A DNA stretch of 64,000 bases, taken from positions 124,001 to 188,000 of IMG/VR virus record IMGVR_UViG_3300035698_018317, one strand, 5' to 3'. This document shows positions 3,215-56,351 of this stretch, in pieces (positions within the stretch are counted from its first letter, which is position 1; each line of letters starts with the position of its first letter). The position numbers were made by a program, and so were the translations under genes. The notes under the pieces were generated by a model. The model had not been told where the DNA came from, searched no databases, and worked only from the letters and a program-made list of their open reading frames with translations.

Positions 3215-3691
3215 ATGAAGGCACTCATTAAAGAAGGCAAACTAATAGGTACGTGTAGTGATGAAGACGCTGTTACGGCACTGGCTGATGGAACGGCAGA
3301 TTCAATACTAACTGTAGACCCCGCAGAAGTCGCCCAATTGTCAGGACGCCCTCTGACTCTCGGCCAAAGACTTCAAAGTAAAATCAACAGTATTGGTCGT
3401 GACTTAGATGAGAGTGCGACAGAACTTGTAAAAAAAGCACCGGGATTATGTGGTGCGGCAAAAGATAAAGTACTATCTTTCGCTGCGACAATTAAAAATA
3501 AAGGCGACGAAGCTTTGGCCCAGTTGCGTGTAGTTGCTCATGAACTGACGGCTCCTGAAGCTGAAGTCGAAGCTCCCGCTGAAGTTGAAGAAGCTCCTGT
3601 TGTTGAAGCTCCTGTTGAAGCACCCGCCGAAGAAGCTCCTGCCGCTGTTGAAGCGGTCGAAGTTGTAGAAGAGGAAATCCCCACAGAATGA
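3215..3691 (+). CDS. Hypothetical protein with acidic Ala/Glu/Pro-rich tail
   Basis: ORF track; overlaps next gene (ATGA). Confidence 0.75.
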   Translation: MKALIKEGKLIGTCSDEDAVTALADGTADSILTVDPAEVAQLSGRPLTLGQRLQSKINSIGRDLDESATELVKKAPGLCGAAKDKVLSFAATIKNKGDEALAQLRVVAHELTAPEAEVEAPAEVEEAPVVEAPVEAPAEEAPAAVEAVEVVEEEIPTE

Positions 3692-5031
3692 GTACATTAG
3701 TAGTAGAAGTTTGTAAAGTTAAGTCGGTAAGACCGCATCCAAATGCGGACAGATTGGCTATAGCTACGGTGAAAGCTTGGGAAACCTGCATTCAGTATGA
3801 CCCCGATACTAAGACAGCAGCGTTCAAGCCCGGAGAAAAGTGTATCTATTTCCCACCTGATTGCATTCTTCCTCCAGCACTAGCGAATAGTCCACATCAA
3901 GTATGCAAAACCAAAAATTGTAAAAATTACAATGTAGTTAAAAGTAAAGATTACAAAAATGGAATGTGCATATCTTGTGGGTTAACGATTAAGTTTATGG
4001 ATGTAACTCCGGGTAGACTCGGCGTAATGTCCTATTGTGCTGAATTGCCGAAACAAGCTGATGGAATTCGTAGCGAGGGTGGCCGTGTAAAAGCCACACG
4101 TTTGCGTGGTCGCCCTTCCTACGGGTTTATCATGAAGATTGATGAATCTAAGGGAGATGACCCATCTTGGAAAGTGGGTCAGGATGTAAAGGCTCATTTC
4201 AAAGTAAAGAAATGGGAACCACCTGAGAAGTCCACTGATGGAGATACAGCTACTCCTAATCCTCGTTTCCATAAATATACTGACATAGAAAATTACAATA
4301 ACTTTCCTGAAATCCTTACAGAAGGGGAAGAAGTAATTTTCACAGAAAAGATTCATGGAAAAAACTGTCGATTAGGTATGGTCTTAGATACGAATGAAAA
4401 AGGTGAAGCTGTATGGACGCCCATGTGCGGAAGTCATGCAGTAAGACGAAAGAAACATAGTCTCAAAAAAATCAAAAGAACGTTCTTGAAATCTGTGTTG
4501 GATTCTTTGAAATATGGAATAAGATTCAGAAAGCCTCCCAAATACACTATTGGCCCGATTTCAGAATTTTGGGGTTATATGACTCCAAAAATCGAAAAAA
4601 TGCTGGTTTGGTTAAGGGATGATTATGAGTGGGGAGAACCTATTTCCAGTATAATCCTGTTTGGAGAAATCTACGGGAAAGGCGTTCAAGATATGACCTA
4701 TGGCCACGCAAAACGTGGACTTAGATGTTTTGATATTGCTGTAAATAGGAAATACGTTAATTTTGAATTGAAAGAAAAATTCCTTAAGCAGTTTGAAGTA
4801 GAAATGGTTCCGATACTTTATCGTGGGCCGTTTACCAGAGAAATTCTTCAAAAACACGTCGATGGACCAACCACGATGTGTGCAAAGACATTGGCAGGGA
4901 AATTCTCTGGACGTGAAGGTGTGGTAATCACGCCTGTCAAAGAACGCCATAATCCTCAAGTAGGACGTGTTATTTTTAAGGCAATCTCCGCTGATTACCT
5001 TGCAAGAAAAAACCCCACTGACGGTCACTAA
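3688..5031 (+). CDS. ATP-dependent RNA ligase (Rnl2/DRB0094-like)
   Basis: N-terminal HPNADRL module; nucleotidyltransferase motifs TEKIHG, FGEIYG, FDI, REGVVI, KAISADYL. Confidence 0.9.
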   Translation: MSTLVVEVCKVKSVRPHPNADRLAIATVKAWETCIQYDPDTKTAAFKPGEKCIYFPPDCILPPALANSPHQVCKTKNCKNYNVVKSKDYKNGMCISCGLTIKFMDVTPGRLGVMSYCAELPKQADGIRSEGGRVKATRLRGRPSYGFIMKIDESKGDDPSWKVGQDVKAHFKVKKWEPPEKSTDGDTATPNPRFHKYTDIENYNNFPEILTEGEEVIFTEKIHGKNCRLGMVLDTNEKGEAVWTPMCGSHAVRRKKHSLKKIKRTFLKSVLDSLKYGIRFRKPPKYTIGPISEFWGYMTPKIEKMLVWLRDDYEWGEPISSIILFGEIYGKGVQDMTYGHAKRGLRCFDIAVNRKYVNFELKEKFLKQFEVEMVPILYRGPFTREILQKHVDGPTTMCAKTLAGKFSGREGVVITPVKERHNPQVGRVIFKAISADYLARKNPTDGH

Positions 5032-5434: not shown

Positions 5435-5860
5435 TTGAGCAACAAGAAGCATTCTGCTGGCGTTTTATTGTTTAAACAAAGTTCAGATGGCATTGTAGTT
5501 CTTATTGTGCATCCATCTGGCGACTATAACGCCAAAGCCGCTTGGAGCGTTCCAAAAGGACTGATAGATGATGGGGAAACCCCTATCATAGCAGGACGAA
5601 GGGAATTAAAAGAAGAGACTGGTGCAATAGCCCCAGATATTCTTATTCCTTTGGAAGACGTTCAATACAAGAGTGGAAAAAAAGTTACCTGTTTTGCGGG
5701 GCTGGCCGATTCTGAATATCAGCCAGCCCCAGCTTCATGGGAAGTAGATAAGGTAGAATTTGTTTCTCTTGATGAAGCTGAAAATTTATTACATTCGGCA
5801 CAACAAGAATTCATTCGAAGATTGAAAAAAGCTCTAAAATGGAAAGCATTTCTAGATTGA
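5435..5860 (+). CDS. NUDIX hydrolase
   Basis: Nudix box GLIDDGETPIIAGRRELKEETG; TTG start. Confidence 0.92.
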   Translation: MSNKKHSAGVLLFKQSSDGIVVLIVHPSGDYNAKAAWSVPKGLIDDGETPIIAGRRELKEETGAIAPDILIPLEDVQYKSGKKVTCFAGLADSEYQPAPASWEVDKVEFVSLDEAENLLHSAQQEFIRRLKKALKWKAFLD

Positions 5861-47658: not shown

Positions 47659-47687
47659 TTTACAAACTAGAACGGATGCACTATTAT
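47659..47687 (+). promoter_or_regulatory. sigma70-type promoter of the leader/tRNA operon
   Basis: TTTACA-17 nt-TATTAT. Confidence 0.7.
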
Positions 47688-47710
47688 ACGTTAGAAGTAG
47701 GAAAAGAAAC

Positions 47711-47797
47711 ATGAACACGAATACGTTTTATTTTAGTCTAAGCTTATTATCCTCATCGCTGCTCTTGAGCAACGATAAAGGAACTGCTGTGGACTAA
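47711..47797 (+). CDS. Putative attenuator leader peptide MNTNTFYFSLSLLSSSLLLSNDKGTAVD
   Basis: AGGA SD; 15 consecutive F/Y/S/L codons at 47726-47770; lies between promoter and terminator. Confidence 0.75.
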   Translation: MNTNTFYFSLSLLSSSLLLSNDKGTAVD

Positions 47798-47821
47798 GGT
47801 ACAAAACACCTAGAGACGGGC

Positions 47822-47857
47822 AAAAGCCCCGAACCACAACGGTTCGGGGCTTTTTTT
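47822..47857 (+). terminator. Intrinsic terminator (attenuator) just before the first tRNA
   Basis: AAAAGCCCCGAACC-ACAAC-GGTTCGGGGCTTTT plus T7. Confidence 0.9.
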
Positions 47858-47868
47858 GTTGTATTTTT

Positions 47869-47957
47869 GGAAAATAGGCAGATATTGGCTTGCTGCGCTG
47901 GTTTGCTAAACCAGTTGGCCTGAAAGGGTCATGAGGGTTCGAATCCCTTGTTTTCCG
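47869..47957 (+). tRNA. trnS: tRNA-Ser(GCT)
   Basis: CTGGT-TT GCT AA-ACCAG; long variable arm; GGTTCGAATCC. Confidence 0.95.
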
Positions 47958-47960
47958 TTT

Positions 47961-48048
47961 GGAAAGTAGCCGAATATTGGTTTGTCGGGCTAGTTTCGAA
48001 AACTAGTTGGCCTTCGGGTCATAAGGGTTCGATTCCTCTTACTTTCCG
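47961..48048 (+). tRNA. trnS: tRNA-Ser(CGA)
   Basis: CTAGT-TT CGA AA-ACTAG; long variable arm. Confidence 0.95.
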
Positions 48049-48117
48049 TGGTGACGATTGCCAATGCAACGCTAGGTTGCATTAGTTTAAATAAATTTAA
48101 AAGTGAATATTGCCATC

Positions 48118-48189
48118 GGGCGGTTAACACTGTGGTCAGTGTGCTGGATTGAAGTCCCAGAAAAGTTGGTTCGATACCATCACCGCCCA
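48118..48189 (+). tRNA. Atypical tRNA, anticodon GAA (Phe-like)
   Basis: GGGCGGT/ACCGCCC acceptor; A31-C39 mismatch; loop TT GAA GT; T-stem mismatch. Confidence 0.7.
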
Positions 48190-48207
48190 TTTTATGTACA
48201 CTCCAAC

Positions 48208-48281
48208 GGTGGTTAGAGTGTGACGGTAGCACGGGTGAGCCTGAAACTCATCAAGAATGGGTTCGATTCCCATAACCACCA
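48208..48281 (+). tRNA. Atypical tRNA, loop CC TGA AA, short variable loop
   Basis: GGTGGTT/AACCACC acceptor; GTGAG/CTCAT stem; C at position 33. Confidence 0.65.
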
Positions 48282-48287
48282 TTAGTC

Positions 48288-48362
48288 GGAGCTTTGGTAC
48301 TGGTCTGGTGACAGTGTGCGCCTGAAGAGCGTAAAAGTTCGGTTCGATTCCGAAAGGCTCCA
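48288..48362 (+). tRNA. Atypical tRNA-Phe(GAA) with G37 and enlarged D-loop
   Basis: GGAGCTT/AGGCTCC; TGCGC-CT GAA GA-GCGTA. Confidence 0.75.
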
Positions 48363-48377
48363 TTTAGTTGTAAAAAC

Positions 48378-48450
48378 GCTGCGGTAGCTCAGTTGGTAGA
48401 GCACTAGACTGAAAATCTAGGTGTCGCTGGTTCGATTCCAGTCCGTAGCA
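48378..48450 (+). tRNA. trnF: tRNA-Phe(GAA), canonical
   Basis: AGCTCAGTTGGTAGAGC D-arm; CTAGA-CT GAA AA-TCTAG. Confidence 0.95.
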
Positions 48451-48452
48451 TT

Positions 48453-48600
48453 GGATATTCACATGGCGGAATATATTGTTTCATTGACCCTTGTTCTTTA
48501 TAGAAATGCAAATGGAACTACAAGGCACACGCAGCTTTCTTCGGGAAGTGTGACCTCCCAGCCGAGGTCTTGTCCGTTCAATTCGGACTGTGAATATCCT
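48453..48600 (+). ncRNA. 148-nt tRNA-like structured RNA
   Basis: 11-bp terminal helix GGATATTCACA/TGTGAATATCC next to T-arm GTCCG-TTCAATT-CGGAC; three further hairpins. Confidence 0.7.
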
Positions 48601-48604
48601 AAAC

Positions 48605-48686
48605 GGCAGTATTGAGCAATTGGCTGCTCCCCAGATTGTAAATCTGGCGTCGAAAGGCATTGAAGGTTCGAGTCCTTCTGCTGCCA
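48605..48686 (+). tRNA. trnY: tRNA-Tyr(GTA) copy 1
   Basis: CCAGA-TT GTA AA-TCTGG; long variable arm. Confidence 0.93.
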
Positions 48687-48689
48687 GTT

Positions 48690-48920
48690 ATGAGTAAGAA
48701 AGATGAAAATAAGCGTAGAGAATACCAAATGCAGAATTATTCCGTGTATTATTTTCCTATAACAGGAGAAGTAATGTGTTGCCCAAAAAAAAGAAGTGTA
48801 TTTGGCGAGTTGCACGACCACCACTATTACATAAATTATTGTACTGATTGTGGGCAGCGAGTAAAACTTTTTGTTGCTAAAAGAAAACGTGTAGTTTGTG
48901 AACGTTGTAAAAAAGATTAG
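48690..48920 (+). CDS. Small Zn-ribbon protein inside the tRNA cluster
   Basis: ATG 48690; CTDC and CERC pairs. Confidence 0.6.
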   Translation: MSKKDENKRREYQMQNYSVYYFPITGEVMCCPKKRSVFGELHDHHYYINYCTDCGQRVKLFVAKRKRVVCERCKKD

Positions 48921-48928
48921 TCTATTTC

Positions 48929-49010
48929 GGCAGTATTGAGCAATTGGCCGCTCAGCGGACTGTAAATCCGCCGCCTTCGGGCATTGAAGGTTCGAGTCCT
49001 TCTGCTGCCA
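48929..49010 (+). tRNA. trnY: tRNA-Tyr(GTA) copy 2
   Basis: GCGGA-CT GTA AA-TCCGC. Confidence 0.95.
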
Positions 49011-49016
49011 TTATTA

Positions 49017-49122
49017 GCCCCCGTGACGGAATTGGCAGACGTGCGAGTTTTAAGGGTTTAAGAACCCACTAAAAGAAACTCGTGTCCATACGGGCGTACA
49101 GGTTCGAGTCCTGTCGGGGGCA
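49017..49122 (+). tRNA. trnL: tRNA-Leu body with 22-nt insertion in the anticodon loop
   Basis: Leu-type D-arm and A73; 29-nt loop at 49049-49077 between CGAGT/ACTCG. Confidence 0.8.
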
Positions 49123-49344
49123 TTAAGATTCAAATTCTTTTTGAATCATCTCCATTACTTTGTTAAAATCTTTTTCACTAGTTGTTTTGGTTTGAACGTA
49201 TTCGGCAGCTTTATCTATAGTGAGACCGCCTGTGCGAATGCTATTTACCATCTTACTAGCTAATTTATTTAAATTTAATTCACCATAACCCCCAACAAGT
49301 GGTGGCATTAATCTTGATTCTAACCATGTGTTAAAAGTTTTCAT
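49123..49344 (-). CDS. Small putative head-internal protein (MKTFNTWLE), antisense within the tRNA cluster
   Basis: Start corrected to 49344; TAGATACA motif upstream. Confidence 0.65.
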   Translation of the reverse strand: MKTFNTWLESRLMPPLVGGYGELNLNKLASKMVNSIRTGGLTIDKAAEYVQTKTTSEKDFNKVMEMIQKEFES

Positions 49345-49357
49345 AATGTATCTATTC

Positions 49358-49442
49358 GCCCTAGTGACGGAATTGGCAGACGTGCTGGCCTTAAAAGCCG
49401 GTGTCAATATATGGCGTGCAGGTTCGAGTCCTGTCTAGGGTA
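49358..49442 (+). tRNA. trnL: tRNA-Leu(TAA)
   Basis: CTGGC-CT TAA AA-GCCGG. Confidence 0.92.
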
Positions 49443-49448
49443 TTTTCT

Positions 49449-49517
49449 GGGGACGTGGTGTGCAGAATGAAGTTAGGACTACACAAGGCTTATAGGTTCG
49501 AGTCCTATCACGGAACA
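49449..49517 (+). pseudogene. Degenerate tRNA remnant
   Basis: Intact T-arm ATAGG-TTCGAGT-CCTAT and 4-bp CGTG/CACG; no recognisable anticodon arm. Confidence 0.45.
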
Positions 49518-49522
49518 TCTCT

Positions 49523-49610
49523 GGAAAGCAGCCGAATATTGGTTTGTCGGGCTAGTTTTGAAAACTAGTTGGCCTCCGGGTCATAAGGGTTCGATTCCTC
49601 TTGCTTTCCT
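49523..49610 (+). tRNA. trnS: tRNA-Ser(TGA)
   Basis: CTAGT-TT TGA AA-ACTAG. Confidence 0.93.
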
Positions 49611-49613
49611 TTT

Positions 49614-49702
49614 GGATGGGAGCCGAATATTGGTTTGTCGGGCTAGTTTGGAAAACTAGTTGGCCTGAAAGGGTCATTAGGGTCCAATTCCCTACTCATC
49701 CG
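49614..49702 (+). tRNA. trnS: tRNA-Ser(GGA)
   Basis: CTAGT-TT GGA AA-ACTAG; T-loop variant TCCAATT. Confidence 0.88.
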
Positions 49703-49760
49703 TTCGAATAAAAATATAAAAATTATTCGAACCTTTACTATTATATAGTGGAGGTAAAAA

Positions 49761-50321
49761 ATGAAAGAAAATATTCTTAGATTAAGAAAAGAAGGAAAAT
49801 CATATGGAGAAATACAAAAAGAGCTAGGTTGTTCTAAAAGCACAATCTCATATCACTGTGGAGAAGGGCAGAGGGAAAAACAGGTTGAGAGGCAAAGGCA
49901 ATTCAGAAAAAACAATGTAATTACTAGAAGAATTGGTTCGTTTACACAAAACAGACCTAAAAAAAAGAACAAACAACCTAAATTTGAAAGAAGCGTAACT
50001 CAAAAAACACAAGAAAAAAGTTATGATTTCCAACGCAAACAAAAATGTTCTAAATTTAATTTCAAAGATGTATTAGAGCATTATGGAGAACAAACAACAT
50101 GTTACTTATCTGGAAGACTTATTGATTTATCAGAACCTAGAACTTATCATTTTGACCATATAATTCCGGTTTCAAAAGGAGGAGATTGTAGTTTTGAAAA
50201 CTTAGGAATTGTTCGTAAAGAAGCAAATAGGGCTAAAAGTGACCTATTAGTAGAAGAATTTATTGAGCTTTGTAAAGACATTCTCGAATACAATGGTTAT
50301 ACAGTAATTAAAAACGATTAA
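49761..50321 (+). CDS. HTH plus HNH homing endonuclease
   Basis: SYGEIQKELGCSKSTISYH; HFDHIIPVSKGG...N...N. Confidence 0.88.
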   Translation: MKENILRLRKEGKSYGEIQKELGCSKSTISYHCGEGQREKQVERQRQFRKNNVITRRIGSFTQNRPKKKNKQPKFERSVTQKTQEKSYDFQRKQKCSKFNFKDVLEHYGEQTTCYLSGRLIDLSEPRTYHFDHIIPVSKGGDCSFENLGIVRKEANRAKSDLLVEEFIELCKDILEYNGYTVIKND

Positions 50322-55009: not shown

Positions 55010-55519
55010 ATGCCAATATGTAAAAAATGTAATAAAGAATTTCCAAGTAGGATAGGTAATAAAACTTATCATAAAAGAAGTTATTGTTTAAAATGTTCTC
55101 CTCCGGGTTCCGGTATGGGGTATGAAATAAGAAAGGCCACTAGAAAAAAAGAAAAAGTAAAAGGAAAAAAAGAATGCCCTATTTGCGGGAAATTTTCGAC
55201 TTGGACTAAAAATAATGTTTGTTCAACATGTCGGATGATGTGGCAGAGATGGAAAACAAAAAAAAGAGCGGTAGATATGAAAGGCGGCAAATGCTGCAAG
55301 TGTGGAGAAACAGATATGCGGGTTTTAACCTTCCACCATCTTAATGTGGAGGACAAAGAATATAATATTTCCAATTTCTACTCAAGAATTTGTTGGGAGA
55401 AAATAGTTTTAGAAATAGAAAAATGTGATTTAATGTGTTTTAATTGTCATGTGAGATTACATTCCGAAATCAATAGAGCCAAGTATTCTTGCATAGAACA
55501 ATACTATGCTATGACCTAA
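55010..55519 (+). CDS. HNH endonuclease with Zn ribbons
   Basis: CCKCG...LTFHHLN...EIEKCDLMCFNCH..LH. Confidence 0.85.
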   Translation: MPICKKCNKEFPSRIGNKTYHKRSYCLKCSPPGSGMGYEIRKATRKKEKVKGKKECPICGKFSTWTKNNVCSTCRMMWQRWKTKKRAVDMKGGKCCKCGETDMRVLTFHHLNVEDKEYNISNFYSRICWEKIVLEIEKCDLMCFNCHVRLHSEINRAKYSCIEQYYAMT

Positions 55520-55585: not shown

Positions 55586-55691
55586 GGCTGAATGACGGAA
55601 TTGGCAGACGTGCGAGCTTTTAGGGTTTGAAAACCCATTAAAAGGTGCTCGTGTCCTTCGGGGCGTGTGGGTTCGAATCCCTCTTTGGCCA
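55586..55691 (+). tRNA. trnL: Second tRNA-Leu body with 22-nt anticodon-loop insertion
   Basis: 29-nt loop at 55618-55646 between CGAGC/GCTCG. Confidence 0.8.
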
Positions 55692-55705
55692 GTAAGGAAA
55701 TTGTT

Positions 55706-56164
55706 ATGTGGCGTGAAGAATACGACGAATACGATGATGATGGCTATCCTTATTATTATCATGATGGCCTTGGTTGTCGTTGTTATAAATATGACAGACC
55801 TCCTTATAATAAAAATTATAACGTGCCGTCTCATATTCATATAATGAACAAGAATGAGGCGAAAGTAATGCGTCGTCTCAAAAATGAAACTGGTTTATCT
55901 GAAGAGGGTATTCGAAAGATTAAGAAATATCGAATTATGCTTTCTGAAGCTCAAAAAGAAGGGCAAAAAGCCAAACGGACAAGGGTGCAAAAAGCTAGAG
56001 ATGAAGTAATGAAATGCGTTTGTCGTAAGCTTAAATTAGCCAAAGAACATCCTGTTACACAGAAAGCATATCGTGAAGAATGGGAACGGCGGCGAAAGGA
56101 ATATGATAATCGTCCTTGTTGTAATAGTAGTATTTATCTAGAATCACCAAAGGATGATAGATAA
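55706..56164 (+). CDS. Hypothetical basic protein (start corrected to MWREE)
   Basis: AAGGA SD; track start lies inside the tRNA. Confidence 0.65.
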   Translation: MWREEYDEYDDDGYPYYYHDGLGCRCYKYDRPPYNKNYNVPSHIHIMNKNEAKVMRRLKNETGLSEEGIRKIKKYRIMLSEAQKEGQKAKRTRVQKARDEVMKCVCRKLKLAKEHPVTQKAYREEWERRRKEYDNRPCCNSSIYLESPKDDR

Positions 56165-56169
56165 AATCC

Positions 56170-56253
56170 AGCCTCGTGACGGAATTGGCAGACGTTCGGG
56201 ACTTAAAATCCCGTGCCCTTCGGGGCGTGTGGGTTCGAGTCCCACCGAGGCTA
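56170..56253 (+). tRNA. trnL: tRNA-Leu(TAA) copy 2
   Basis: CGGGA-CT TAA AA-TCCCG. Confidence 0.95.
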
Positions 56254-56267
56254 TTTAGAAATAATCA

Positions 56268-56351
56268 GGCCGAGTGACGGAACTGGCAGACGTGCGGGGT
56301 TCAAATTCCCGTGTCCGAAAGGGCGTGTGGGTTCGAGTCCCACCTCGGCCA
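56268..56351 (+). tRNA. trnL: tRNA-Leu(CAA)
   Basis: CGGGG-TT CAA AT-TCCCG. Confidence 0.95.

What the first reader, a model, noticed from the sequence alone, without database searches (positions are those of the whole stretch)
48118..48450. Four tandem Phe-like tRNAs, three structurally aberrant
Seen: one canonical Phe(GAA) preceded by three variants with unrelated acceptor stems and unusual D-arms. Their loops are TT GAA GT (with A31-C39 mismatch), CC TGA AA (C33; a Ser-type anticodon on a short-variable-arm body, or a 1-nt-shifted GAA) and CT GAA GA (G37). Established: phage tRNA anticodon-loop variants can escape host anticodon nucleases, and SerRS recognises the long variable arm rather than the anticodon. 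Inference: these are nuclease-resistant or decoy Phe tRNAs, and the 48208 species could mistranslate UCA if charged with a non-Ser amino acid.
Basis: partly seen in the sequence, partly recalled or inferred. Interest (0 to 1): 0.6.

Follow-up and report, generated by a model that had tools for sequence, protein, structure and literature searches.

The report
Four variant phage phenylalanine tRNAs
A large phage from a salt lake carries four different phenylalanine tRNA genes in a row, three of them non-standard but apparently functional, in a tRNA operon that looks as if it switches on when the cell runs short of working Phe, Tyr, Ser and Leu tRNAs.

Summary
Window 48118-48450 holds four adjacent tRNA genes, called A to D here.

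They are not decayed copies:
- A is 71/72 identical in a related phage and keeps both of its stem mismatches.
- B differs from its counterpart in another relative by six compensated base-pair changes.
- The G37 of A and C is common in viruses: 37 of 77 sampled viral tRNA-Phe genes have it, and only Phe does.
- B's 'Ser-type UGA, C33' loop is most simply a Phe(GAA) loop with two extra bases 5' of U33. Its counterpart reads UUGAAAC.

The contig, an incomplete phage genome, encodes tRNAs only for Ser, Phe, Tyr and Leu. The main cluster follows a promoter-like site, a 28-codon leader ORF and a strong terminator. The leader's 15-codon run uses one codon for each of the 11 isoacceptor families of those four amino acids. 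A distant relative with only Leu, Ser and Tyr tRNAs in the cluster behind its leader has a Leu/Ser/Tyr run there, without Phe.

Best reading: inducible back-up Phe decoders. Nuclease resistance or a decoy role remains plausible but untested, because no RNA data and no host are known.

The parts
47659..47687 (+). Sigma-70-like promoter candidate (TTTACA, 17 nt, TATTAT) ahead of the leader ORF
   Evidence: Consensus scan, 10 of 12 matches. This is a consensus match only; function was not shown.
47711..47797 (+). 28-codon leader ORF (MNTNTFYFSLSLLSSSLLLSNDKGTAVD). Its 15-codon run holds only Phe, Tyr, Ser and Leu codons.
   Evidence: Translation. The run covers all 11 isoacceptor families of the four amino acids; P is about 1e-3 for 15 such codons drawn by phage usage, and the next-best of 117 runs in the genome covers 8. 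It is conserved in the relatives L001 and L060. A sequence-unrelated analogue lies in the distant relative G003.
47822..47861 (+). Intrinsic terminator between the leader and the first tRNA: 14-bp stem, 8 G-C pairs, then a T-run
   Evidence: The leader region folds at -55.3 kcal/mol, z = -5.4 against shuffles. Conserved in L001 and L060.
47868..48048 (+). tRNA-Ser(GCU) and tRNA-Ser(CGA), the first genes of the operon
   Evidence: ARAGORN. Rfam gives weak tRNA and tRNA-Sec-like matches. Identity to L060 is 81/91 and 87/88.
48063..48083 (+). Conserved 8-bp spacer hairpin, followed by an AT-rich stretch, directly upstream of the first Phe-type gene
   Evidence: Present upstream of A in the window and in L060, and upstream of the B-type gene in L001. 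The spacer is 62/69 and 57/61 identical. Its role (processing site or promoter) was not tested.
48118..48189 (+). tRNA A: Phe(GAA), loop UUGAAGU with G37, A31.C39 and U50.U64 mismatches, U14, 4-nt variable loop, A73
   Evidence: Rfam 50.2 bits. It is 71/72 identical in L060, differing only at position 38 (U to C), with both mismatches kept. No blastn match in 50,697 phage records.
48208..48281 (+). tRNA B: folds as a 6-bp anticodon stem with loop CCUGAAA (read as anticodon UGA, C33), or as a 5-bp stem with the 9-nt loop GCCUGAAAC (U-GAA-A-C kept); A73
   Evidence: Rfam 32.1 bits. ARAGORN calls it Ser-tga. The counterpart L001:13421-13491 has loop UUGAAAC and six compensated stem changes (my pairing count). 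No blastn match in phages.
48288..48362 (+). tRNA C: Phe(GAA), loop CUGAAGA with G37, two extra bases before the D stem (or an 8/4 acceptor/T arrangement), A73
   Evidence: Rfam 38.7 bits. ARAGORN relaxed calls it Phe-gaa. The minimum-energy fold is a cloverleaf. Its nearest relative is A (41/53 identical to the A copy of L060 from the D arm to the T loop; 55/75 globally to window A). No counterpart was found elsewhere.
48378..48450 (+). tRNA D: canonical bacterial-type tRNA-Phe(GAA), loop CUGAAAA
   Evidence: Rfam 73.2 bits and ARAGORN. In L060 the counterpart carries a 22-nt hairpin insertion in the anticodon loop, and its remaining loop bases read UUGAAGC.

Best explanation
A to D are four phenylalanine tRNA (anticodon GAA) isodecoder genes of separate descent. 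They have been gathered into one phage tRNA operon.

D is the bacterial type, with A37. A and C are the virus-typical G37 type on unusual bodies. B derives from a UUGAAAC-loop Phe tRNA and has gained two bases on the 5' side of the loop.

The operon encodes only Ser, Phe, Tyr and Leu tRNAs. It lies behind a promoter-like site, a short leader ORF and an intrinsic terminator. The leader contains one codon for every isoacceptor family of those four amino acids.

Proposed working (inferred): when decoding of these codons slows, because host tRNAs are cleaved, blocked, under-modified or simply outrun by demand, ribosomes stall in the leader. Termination is then relieved and the phage tRNAs are made. 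The phage CCA-adding enzyme completes them, and they restore decoding.

The altered loops (G37; changes at positions 32, 33 and 38) and the unusual bodies of the Phe set would make these tRNAs independent of, or insensitive to, whatever disables the host tRNA-Phe. That could be the A37 hypermodification pathway or a tRNA-targeting nuclease.

Shown here: the genes, their conservation, the operon layout, and the match between leader composition and tRNA set. Inferred: expression, charging with Phe, antitermination, and the reason for the loop changes.
For: - All four exceed the Rfam tRNA threshold. All have A73, and all have GAA in the loop.
- A is 71/72 identical in L060 while other genes of the same operon are 84-89% identical. 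Its single change is in the loop, and both stem mismatches are retained.
- B and its L001 counterpart differ at 18 of 74 aligned positions, yet all stems stay paired through six double changes. The loop half GAAAC is conserved.
- G37 occurs in 37 of 77 unselected viral tRNA-Phe genes. In G37-bearing loci it is usually the only Phe gene (75 of 80 loci), while Cys, Trp, Tyr and Ser-UGA keep A37.
- In L060, both the A copy and the D copy (its loop bases outside the insertion) have the loop UUGAAGC.
- All tRNA genes of the 225-kb contig are Ser, Phe, Tyr or Leu. Amino-acid usage is ordinary and Lys, Ile and Glu are commoner, so plain codon compensation does not explain the set.
- The leader covers 11 of 11 isoacceptor families, uses rare codons and skips the commonest ones. 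A terminator follows it.
- G003, a distant relative, has the same layout with unrelated sequence. Its leader run holds only Leu, Ser and Tyr codons, and the cluster behind it holds Leu, Ser and Tyr tRNAs and no Phe.
- The phage encodes a CCA-adding enzyme and an RNA ligase.
Against: - There are no RNA data: none of the 24 listed runs is on record as RNA. Expression, processing and charging are therefore unknown.
- A has a weakened anticodon stem and T stem, and its lowest-energy fold is not a cloverleaf.
- B's lowest-energy fold puts UGA, not GAA, at positions 34-36, with C33.
- C has no counterpart in any relative, so selection on it is not shown.
- A, B and C lack several core features of bacterial tRNA-Phe (U8-A14, G10, 5-nt variable loop). 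PheRS charging is therefore not assured.
- No clear antiterminator competing with the 14-bp terminator was found by folding.
- The other A36 tRNAs of the phage keep A37, so a nuclease or pathway keyed on modified A37 cannot explain the whole set.
- The contig is estimated at only 44% complete, and the host is unknown.
Confidence: 0.5

Rival explanations
1. Nuclease-escape or decoy tRNAs in the strict sense. A, B and C exist because a host anticodon nuclease or other tRNA-targeting defence attacks host tRNA-Phe. They either resist cleavage while still decoding, or bind the nuclease without being cut (B especially).
For: Escape by loop changes in phage tRNAs is established (PMC10264068), and single phage tRNAs neutralise PARIS and retron Eco7 (PMC11464382, PMC11555353). 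The differences between orthologues fall in the anticodon loop: A differs at position 38, and Ser-2 at position 34 only. The restricted set and the leader sensor imply that these tRNAs become limiting during infection. tRNA-Phe(GAA) was among the tRNAs cleaved by a bacterial Schlafen nuclease (PMC13056530).
Against: No nuclease, host or cleavage site is known here. G37 is Phe-specific and found in about half of sampled viral tRNA-Phe genes from many environments. That points to a general property of Phe decoding rather than to one defence system. This reading overlaps with the best explanation and differs only in naming the cause.
Confidence: 0.25
2. Some of the three (chiefly B in this phage, and C) are redundant copies drifting toward loss. 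The phage needs only one or two working Phe tRNAs, and the rest are passengers of cassette exchange near homing endonuclease genes.
For: B's loop departs from the working UUGAAAC of its counterpart. C has no counterpart. B scores 32.1 bits, close to the 29-bit threshold. Gene content at this slot differs between the three relatives. HNH endonuclease genes flank both clusters.
Against: In B and C every stem of the cloverleaf is fully paired, the T loops are canonical, and the cloverleaf is the minimum-energy fold. A keeps its exact sequence across lineages. B's divergence from its counterpart is fully compensated.
Confidence: 0.15
3. B really presents UGA and reads the Ser codon UCA (or UCN) with a non-Ser amino acid, giving deliberate or harmful recoding.
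For: The lowest-energy fold and ARAGORN place UGA at positions 34-36. The short variable region excludes normal SerRS recognition (established knowledge). Other viral tRNAs with the same D arm have non-U33 loops and other anticodons (L017 CAUCCAG, L040 CUCUGAA).
Against: The counterpart has GAA with U33 and A37, and B keeps U-GAA-A-C in register. UCA is a common codon in the phage (13.5 per 1000). A regular long-arm Ser(UGA) gene is present at 49523-49610. No known synthetase uses UGA as a positive identity element, and PheRS depends strongly on G34 (established knowledge).
Confidence: 0.05
4. The odd genes work outside decoding, for example as RNase P/Z punctuation for operon processing, as primers, or as regulators.
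For: The operon also contains a conserved non-tRNA structured RNA (48451-48604) and tRNA genes with hairpin insertions in their loops. Not every unit therefore need be a decoder.
Against: The anticodon GAA and A73 are kept in all of them. Loop sequences match types seen in many viral Phe genes. The leader contains UUU codons only in the lineages that carry Phe genes.
Confidence: 0.05

Closest known systems
Phage tRNAs with anticodon-loop changes that evade tRNA-targeting defences (van den Berg et al. 2023, PMC10264068; T5 tRNA-Lys against PARIS, PMC11464382; T5 tRNA-Tyr against retron Eco7, PMC11555353)
   Same: Phage-encoded isodecoders whose loops differ from the bacterial norm at positions flanking the anticodon. 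They are plausibly needed when host tRNAs are depleted.
   Different: No nuclease, host or resistance is known here. The isotype is Phe, in four versions. The bodies, not only the loops, are unusual. The genes lie in an operon with a leader-ORF sensor.
Leader-peptide transcription attenuators of amino-acid and synthetase operons (pheA leader pheL, PMC3082878; also his, leu, thr and pheST leaders, from my own knowledge)
   Same: A short ORF with a run of regulatory codons, followed by an intrinsic terminator, ahead of genes whose products relieve the shortage that is sensed.
   Different: The regulated genes are tRNAs themselves. The run samples 11 isoacceptor families of four amino acids rather than repeating one codon. 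A competing antiterminator was not resolved. No report of such a leader on a tRNA operon was found.
Phage T4 tRNA cluster with stable RNAs and the SegB homing endonuclease, and the stress-induced tRNA array of Anabaena (PMC8421152)
   Same: Tandem tRNA genes with interspersed small stable RNA, neighbouring homing endonuclease genes, and (in Anabaena) induction under translational stress.
   Different: Those arrays cover many isotypes. Here only Ser, Phe, Tyr and Leu occur, with several versions of each.
tRNA-Phe with G37 in archaea and eukaryotes (m1G, then wyosine derivatives; PMC5113207, PMC4024628)
   Same: G rather than A at position 37, next to anticodon GAA. Loop CUGAAGA as in C.
   Different: The rest of the system is bacterial in style: long-arm Tyr tRNAs, an intrinsic terminator and a sigma-70-like promoter. 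No Trm5/TYW or TrmD gene was found on the contig. Whether G37 is modified is unknown.
tRNAs with enlarged (8-9 nt) anticodon loops, such as frameshift suppressors and yeast mitochondrial tRNA-Thr1 (my own knowledge)
   Same: B can present a 9-nt loop with extra bases 5' of U33.
   Different: In B the two outer loop bases can pair, giving a 6-bp stem and a shifted 7-nt loop. No evidence for frameshifting was sought or found.

Membership tests
tRNA (Rfam RF00005) | Covariance-model score at or above the gathering score (29 bits) | tested here: met
   D 73.2, A 50.2, C 38.7 and B 32.1 bits.
tRNA (Rfam RF00005) | Cloverleaf with a paired 7-bp acceptor stem, a T loop of the UUCGAUN type and G18-G19 in the D loop | tested here: met
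   Read from the Rfam alignments and ARAGORN drawings. B, C and D give the cloverleaf as the minimum-energy fold. A does not, because of its A31.C39 and U50.U64 mismatches.
tRNA-Phe (bacterial PheRS substrate) | GAA at positions 34-36 of a 7-nt loop, preceded by U33 | tested here: met
   This holds for A, C and D. B is treated in the next row.
tRNA-Phe (bacterial PheRS substrate) | The same feature, for B | tested here: inconclusive
   The lowest-energy fold gives C33 and UGA. With the 5-bp stem of its counterpart the loop is GCCUGAAAC, with U directly before GAA. The counterpart has UUGAAAC.
tRNA-Phe (bacterial PheRS substrate) | Discriminator A73 | tested here: met
   All four end in A after the acceptor stem.
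tRNA-Phe (bacterial PheRS substrate) | A37, the site of i6A/ms2i6A in bacteria | tested here: not met
   A and C have G37; B and D have A37. G37 is nevertheless found in 37 of 77 sampled viral tRNA-Phe genes.
tRNA-Phe (bacterial PheRS substrate) | Core elements reported for E. coli tRNA-Phe identity (G10, A26, U20, G44-U45, U59-U60), plus U8-A14 and a 5-nt variable loop | tested here: not met
   D has all of them. A, B and C lack several: A has A10, G26, U14 and a 4-nt variable loop; B has A8, U14 and a 3-bp D stem; C has extra bases at positions 9/10. The list of identity elements comes from my own knowledge.
tRNA-Phe (bacterial PheRS substrate) | Aminoacylation with phenylalanine | not testable with these tools
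   This needs charging assays or charged-tRNA sequencing.
Defence-evading phage tRNA | Loop differs from the host's cognate tRNA at the nuclease's recognition or cleavage positions | not testable with these tools
   The host is unknown. No exact match of A or of the core of D was found in 185,579 species genomes. Differences from the general bacterial loop CUGAAAA lie at positions 32, 33, 37 and 38.
Defence-evading phage tRNA | Resistance to cleavage, and rescue of infection | not testable with these tools
   This is an experimental question.
Leader-peptide attenuator | Short ORF with a ribosome-binding site and a run of codons that match the regulated function | tested here: met
   ORF 47711-47797 with GGA 8-11 nt upstream of its start. 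The run covers 11 of 11 isoacceptor families. Run composition tracks the tRNA set in G003.
Leader-peptide attenuator | Intrinsic terminator between the leader and the regulated genes | tested here: met
   47822-47854, 14 bp plus a T-run. Also present in L001, L060 and G003.
Leader-peptide attenuator | Alternative antiterminator pairing that forms when the ribosome stalls | tested here: inconclusive
   A long helix pairs the Phe-Tyr-Phe-Ser-Leu-Ser codons with the stop-codon region. With the run masked, only weak pairings touch the 5' arm of the terminator.

The most novel reading that the evidence does not exclude
The phage lineage carries a self-regulating spare decoding set. A leader ORF acts as a gauge for every Phe, Tyr, Ser and Leu isoacceptor and switches on an operon of deliberately non-standard tRNAs: G37 or shifted-loop Phe, Sec-like Ser bodies, and Leu and Phe genes with 22-nt hairpin insertions. 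These tRNAs would be refractory to a host (or phage-inflicted) attack on the long-variable-arm tRNAs and tRNA-Phe. On this reading the four Phe genes are a diversified panel, so that at least one survives in any host.
Probability: 0.3. Interest if true: 0.85.

Novelty: new variant of a known kind. Interest (0 to 1): 0.65.

Why it matters
Why phages carry tRNA genes has been debated for decades. This case offers three handles on the question.

1. A tRNA operon whose own leader ORF appears to measure decoding of exactly the codons its tRNAs read. That would make 'phage tRNAs answer tRNA depletion' directly testable with reporter fusions. I found no earlier report of such control of tRNA genes.

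2. Four unlike Phe tRNAs side by side give a natural panel for asking which features (G37, positions 32/33/38, the core) matter for charging, decoding and nuclease sensitivity.

3. The survey done here suggests that G37 is a common, Phe-specific trait of viral tRNA-Phe. This point deserves its own study, for example of independence from A37 hypermodification, of frameshifting, or of defence evasion.

Tried and rejected
- Sequence searches with A, B and C against 50,697 phage records found nothing. Megablast of the whole cluster also found nothing.
- Exact-pattern scans of IMG/VR for the C arm, the spacer hairpin, the leader and the 22-nt insert family found only the two 3300025141 contigs or nothing.
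- Scans of 185,579 species genomes for the A arm and for the core of D found nothing, so no host clue emerged.
The L060-type metagenome contigs are not held for whole-record searches.
- Expression could not be tested. None of the 24 listed runs is on record as RNA; the four I laid are DNA contigs. The apparent joint 48196 to 48334 in run X22 has only 32 letters on one side. It links similar variable/T-arm sequences of A and C, so I treat it as an alignment effect.
- The contig has no hit to RtcB, T4 Rnl1-type ligase, TrmD or PheRS. The weak Trm5/TYW2 hit is an FkbM-type methyltransferase. The contig is about 44% complete, so absence is not informative.
- A classical 1:2 / 2:3 / 3:4 attenuator model was not recovered by constrained folding.
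- My first chance estimate for the leader run was too optimistic. Runs of Phe/Leu/Ser/Tyr of 8 or more codons occur 117 times in the six frames of this AT-rich genome, so I replaced it with the isoacceptor-coverage statistic.
- Codon compensation as the sole reason for the tRNA set was rejected on amino-acid and codon usage.
- Bacterial Schlafen papers were checked for a preference for long-variable-arm tRNAs; none is reported.
- Structure prediction, complex prediction and the large protein searches were not used.
Full report
OBSERVATION

I call them A (48118-48189), B (48208-48281), C (48288-48362) and D (48378-48450). The Rfam tRNA covariance model has a gathering score of 29 bits. It gives D 73.2, A 50.2, C 38.7 and B 32.1 bits, with E-values between 6.5e-15 and 1.3e-3 in a 10-kb search.

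The loops are as described. A has UUGAAGU behind an A31.C39 mismatch. B has CCUGAAA. C has CUGAAGA. D has CUGAAAA. ARAGORN at default settings calls only B (as Ser-tga) and D (Phe). With a relaxed threshold it also calls C as Phe-gaa, drawn with an 8-bp acceptor and a 4-bp T stem. It never calls A.

Pairwise identity among the four is 65-73%, hardly above the 54-62% they share with the Tyr and Leu genes. They are therefore adjacent genes of separate descent, not recent tandem copies. Contigs from two salt-lake metagenome runs of separate studies reproduce the stretch without a single difference: X1 from 47663 to 48413, X2 from 48091 to 48612.

CONTEXT

The window lies in a single 225,284-bp viral contig with 36.8% G+C, estimated about 44% complete. 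It encodes a contractile-tail sheath, ribonucleotide reductase and SbcCD-like nuclease. Its nearest cultured relatives share only 38-40% amino-acid identity in the sheath protein. It is thus a large myovirus-type phage from saline or marine water.

Every tRNA gene of the contig lies in the window, at 47868-49703 and 55586-56351. All are Ser, Phe, Tyr or Leu. Amino-acid usage of the phage is ordinary, and Lys, Ile and Glu are used more than Phe or Tyr. Simple codon compensation therefore does not explain the choice.

The contig also encodes a CCA-adding enzyme, which fits the fact that none of the tRNA genes encodes CCA, and an Rnl2-type RNA ligase. HNH endonuclease genes sit next to both clusters.

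RELATIVES AND SELECTION

Pattern and protein searches found two other genotypes, plus one contig identical to the window.

In the L060 type (a 111-kb metagenome contig and two shorter ones) the order is: leader, Ser, Ser, spacer hairpin, A, a minus-strand ORF, then a D-type gene. A there is 71/72 identical to the window's A. In the same comparison Ser(GCU) is 81/91, Tyr about 70/84 and the D body 62/73. The single change in A is U38 to C, and both stem mismatches are retained.

In the L001 type (47-kb IMG/VR contigs; the neighbouring VWA protein is 67% identical) the slot after the same spacer hairpin holds a B-type gene. It differs from the window's B at 18 of 74 aligned positions. Every stem stays paired through six double changes: 5-68 in the acceptor stem, 28-42 and 31-39 in the anticodon stem, and 50-64, 51-63 and 52-62 in the T stem. 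This count is my own, made on the sequences.

These patterns are what purifying selection on a folded tRNA produces. They argue against pseudogenes for A and B. C has no counterpart anywhere. Its closest relative is A: 41/53 identical to the A copy of L060 from the D arm to the T loop, and 55/75 globally to window A. All its stems are paired and its minimum-energy fold is a cloverleaf.

G37 IS A VIRAL NORM FOR PHE

In the L060 type, the D-type gene carries a 22-nt hairpin insertion in the anticodon loop. The loop bases outside the insertion read UUGAAGC, the same as that phage's A gene. I then scanned IMG/VR for the canonical D arm followed by a GAA loop.

Of 80 fetched genes, 78 had a perfect 5-bp anticodon stem. 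The loops were CUGAAGA (33), UUGAAGC (27), UUGAAGA (18) and UUGAAGU (1).
- In those loci the G37 gene is usually the only Phe gene (75 of 80 loci). The other tRNAs with A36 keep A37: Cys 23/23, Trp 40/40, Tyr 38/38, Ser-UGA 21/21.
- A scan allowing A or G at position 37 returned 40 A37 and 37 G37 genes.

The G37 of A and C, which looked aberrant against bacterial tRNA-Phe, is therefore a common and Phe-specific viral trait. I found no paper describing this. I could not run the matching census on bacterial genomes, so the statement that bacteria nearly always have A37 rests on my general knowledge.

WHAT B IS

The B-type gene of L001 has a normal loop, UUGAAAC. If the window's B is given the same 5-bp stem, its loop is GCCUGAAAC. 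The 3' part (GAA, A37, C38) and the U before GAA are unchanged, and two bases have been added on the 5' side. Because the outer G and C can pair, folding programs draw a 6-bp stem and the shifted loop CCUGAAA, which reads as 'Ser UGA with C33'.

The phage has a regular long-arm Ser(UGA) gene at 49523-49610 and uses UCA often, at 13.5 per 1000 codons. I therefore think UCA misreading is unlikely.

A caution: other viral contigs carry tRNAs with the same D arm and unusual loops (L017 CAUCCAG; L040 CUCUGAA, called Gln). This body type may be prone to loop remodelling. Which register B adopts on the ribosome cannot be settled here.

THE OPERON AND ITS LEADER

Upstream of the first tRNA lie three elements:
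- a sigma-70-like promoter candidate at 47659-47687;
- an ORF of 28 codons at 47711-47797;
- an intrinsic terminator at 47822-47854, a 14-bp stem followed by a T-run.

The ORF contains a run of 15 codons for Phe, Tyr, Ser and Leu only. The run uses TTT, TAT, AGT/AGC, TCC, TCA, TCG, TTA, TTG, CTA, CTG and CTC. That is one codon for each of the 11 isoacceptor families of these four amino acids. It includes the phage's rarest codons and omits its commonest ones, CTT and TCT.

Such runs are not rare in the six frames of this AT-rich genome: there are 117 of 8 or more codons. But the next best covers 8 families, and 15 codons drawn by phage usage cover all 11 with a probability of about 0.001. The element is conserved in the L001 and L060 types.

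The strongest support comes from G003, a 341-kb relative whose VWA protein is 43% identical. There a promoter candidate, a GTG-started ORF with a 14-codon run of Leu, Ser and Tyr codons covering all 10 of their families, and a strong terminator precede the main tRNA cluster, which holds Leu, Ser and Tyr genes and no Phe. A single Glu gene lies far off, near 289 kb. The nucleotide sequence is unrelated, but the logic is the same, and Phe codons appear in the run only where Phe genes are present.

Folding pairs the Phe-Tyr-Phe-Ser-Leu-Ser codons with the stop-codon region. I did not find a convincing antiterminator, so the step from stalling to read-through is inferred.

MECHANISM AND RIVALS

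My best reading is that A to D are Phe(GAA) isodecoders of an inducible spare decoding set. Shown: the genes, their selection, the layout, and the match between leader and tRNA set. Inferred: transcription control by stalling, maturation, charging with Phe, and the purpose of the altered loops.

For G37 I see two candidate reasons:
- It may free a tRNA that is made in bulk from dependence on the A37 isopentenylation/thiomethylation pathway. That pathway matters most for the all-A:U Phe codon-anticodon pair.
- It may remove a determinant of a tRNA-directed nuclease.

The first fits the Phe-specificity and the wide occurrence. The second fits the way differences between orthologues concentrate in loops (A at position 38; Ser-2 at position 34). 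Neither was tested.

Its weak point is that nothing ties it to a particular defence system. Decay of B and/or C, recoding of UCA by B, and non-decoding roles are less likely, for the reasons given under the rival explanations.

COMPARISON WITH WHAT IS KNOWN

The closest known systems are these:
- phage tRNAs that escape tRNA-targeting immunity (PMC10264068, PMC11464382, PMC11555353);
- leader-peptide attenuators such as pheL (PMC3082878);
- the T4 tRNA cluster with its stable RNAs and homing endonuclease, and the stress-induced tRNA array of Anabaena (PMC8421152);
- the G37-bearing tRNA-Phe of archaea and eukaryotes (PMC5113207).

The genes pass the tRNA family test. As bacterial-type tRNA-Phe, only D passes every sequence feature. 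A and C fail on A37 and on core elements. B is inconclusive on anticodon register. Function as Phe acceptors is untestable here.

I rate the finding a new variant of a known kind. The most unusual part, the leader-gauged tRNA operon, lies just outside the coordinates I was given.

LIMITS

No RNA evidence exists for this phage, the host is unknown, and the contig is incomplete. Only three genotypes of close relatives were found, so the conservation arguments rest on few sequences.

Noticed in passing
window 47659-47861: A promoter candidate, a 28-codon leader ORF whose 15-codon run samples all 11 Phe/Tyr/Ser/Leu isoacceptor families, and a strong terminator lie directly ahead of the tRNA operon. 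This looks like a leader-peptide attenuator controlling tRNA genes, and I found no report of such control.
   Followed up: yes
L055 (G003:C1:107575-110649), minus strand, about 109.7-109.95 kb of the record: A distant 341-kb relative has the same layout with unrelated sequence. The order is TTGACA/TAAGAT promoter candidate, a GTG-started ORF with the run LLSSYYSLSLSLSS covering all 10 Leu/Ser/Tyr families, a terminator, then a cluster of Leu, Ser and Tyr tRNAs without Phe.
   Followed up: partly
window 49017-49122 and 55586-55691; L060:1055-1150: Two Leu-type genes in the window, and the D-type Phe gene in the relative, carry similar 22-nt hairpin insertions in the anticodon loop (TAAGGGTTTAAGAACCCACTAA, TTAGGGTTTGAAAACCCATTAA, TAAAGGTTAAAAAACCTAATAG). 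They are too short for group I introns and show no clear bulge-helix-bulge motif. Depending on where the cut falls, the Leu genes would read UAA, UAG or AAG. How, or whether, the insertions are removed is unknown; the phage does have an RNA ligase.
   Followed up: partly
window 47868-48048 and 49523-49703: The four long-arm Ser genes are drawn by ARAGORN with 8-bp acceptor stems. They match the tRNA-Sec model weakly (31-39 bits, below its 47-bit threshold). Their T stems contain an A.C mismatch, and some have U rather than G as discriminator. These are Sec-like or allo-tRNA-like bodies with Ser anticodons.
   Followed up: no
window 48451-48604: A conserved structured RNA of about 150 nt lies between Phe D and the first Tyr gene. 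It is closed by an 11-bp helix, is 148/159 identical in L060 with G-U-compatible changes, and has no Rfam match. It recalls the stable RNAs of the T4 tRNA cluster.
   Followed up: partly
window 49443-49519; L060:2351-2490: The window has only the 3' part of a Leu-type gene (T arm and acceptor 3' strand). In L060 the counterpart is a full 140-nt Leu gene with an insertion of 53 nt by ARAGORN's call in the anticodon loop. This is either a broken gene or a half-gene.
   Followed up: partly
L029, L039 (G003 record): G003 has four 76-nt tRNAs with Leu anticodons (CAG, UAA, UAG, CAA) but short variable regions, beside normal long-arm Leu genes.
   Followed up: no
IMG/VR loci L069-L148 and L184-L225: About half of sampled viral tRNA-Phe genes with a canonical D arm have G37 (37 of 77). 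In those loci the other A36 tRNAs keep A37. This is a general, Phe-specific viral trait that I did not find described.
   Followed up: partly
L017 (reverse strand, D arm at 2351-2365 of the reverse complement); L040:2667-2740 / L007 (D arm at 5776-5790): Other viral contigs hold tRNAs with the same D arm as B (GTGTGACGGTAGCAC) and unusual loops: CAUCCAG (A33, called Gly-UCC) and CUCUGAA (called Gln-CUG).
   Followed up: no
window 3688-5031; genome C1 about 29.5-31.1 kb (L066:688-2244, minus): An RNA ligase (Pfam PF09414 with a PHA02142 OB fold; phrog_968) and a 518-aa CCA-adding/poly(A) polymerase-family enzyme are encoded by the phage.
   Followed up: partly
window 49761-50321 and 55010-55519: HNH endonuclease genes lie directly after the first tRNA cluster and directly before the second, as with SegB next to the T4 tRNA genes. 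Gene content of the Phe slot differs between relatives, which suggests cassette exchange.
   Followed up: partly
window 48687-48920 and 49123-49347 (minus): Small ORFs lie inside the tRNA cluster. One is a 77-aa Cys-rich zinc-ribbon-like protein between the two Tyr genes; the other is a 74-aa ORF on the opposite strand. Neither has a family assignment.
   Followed up: no
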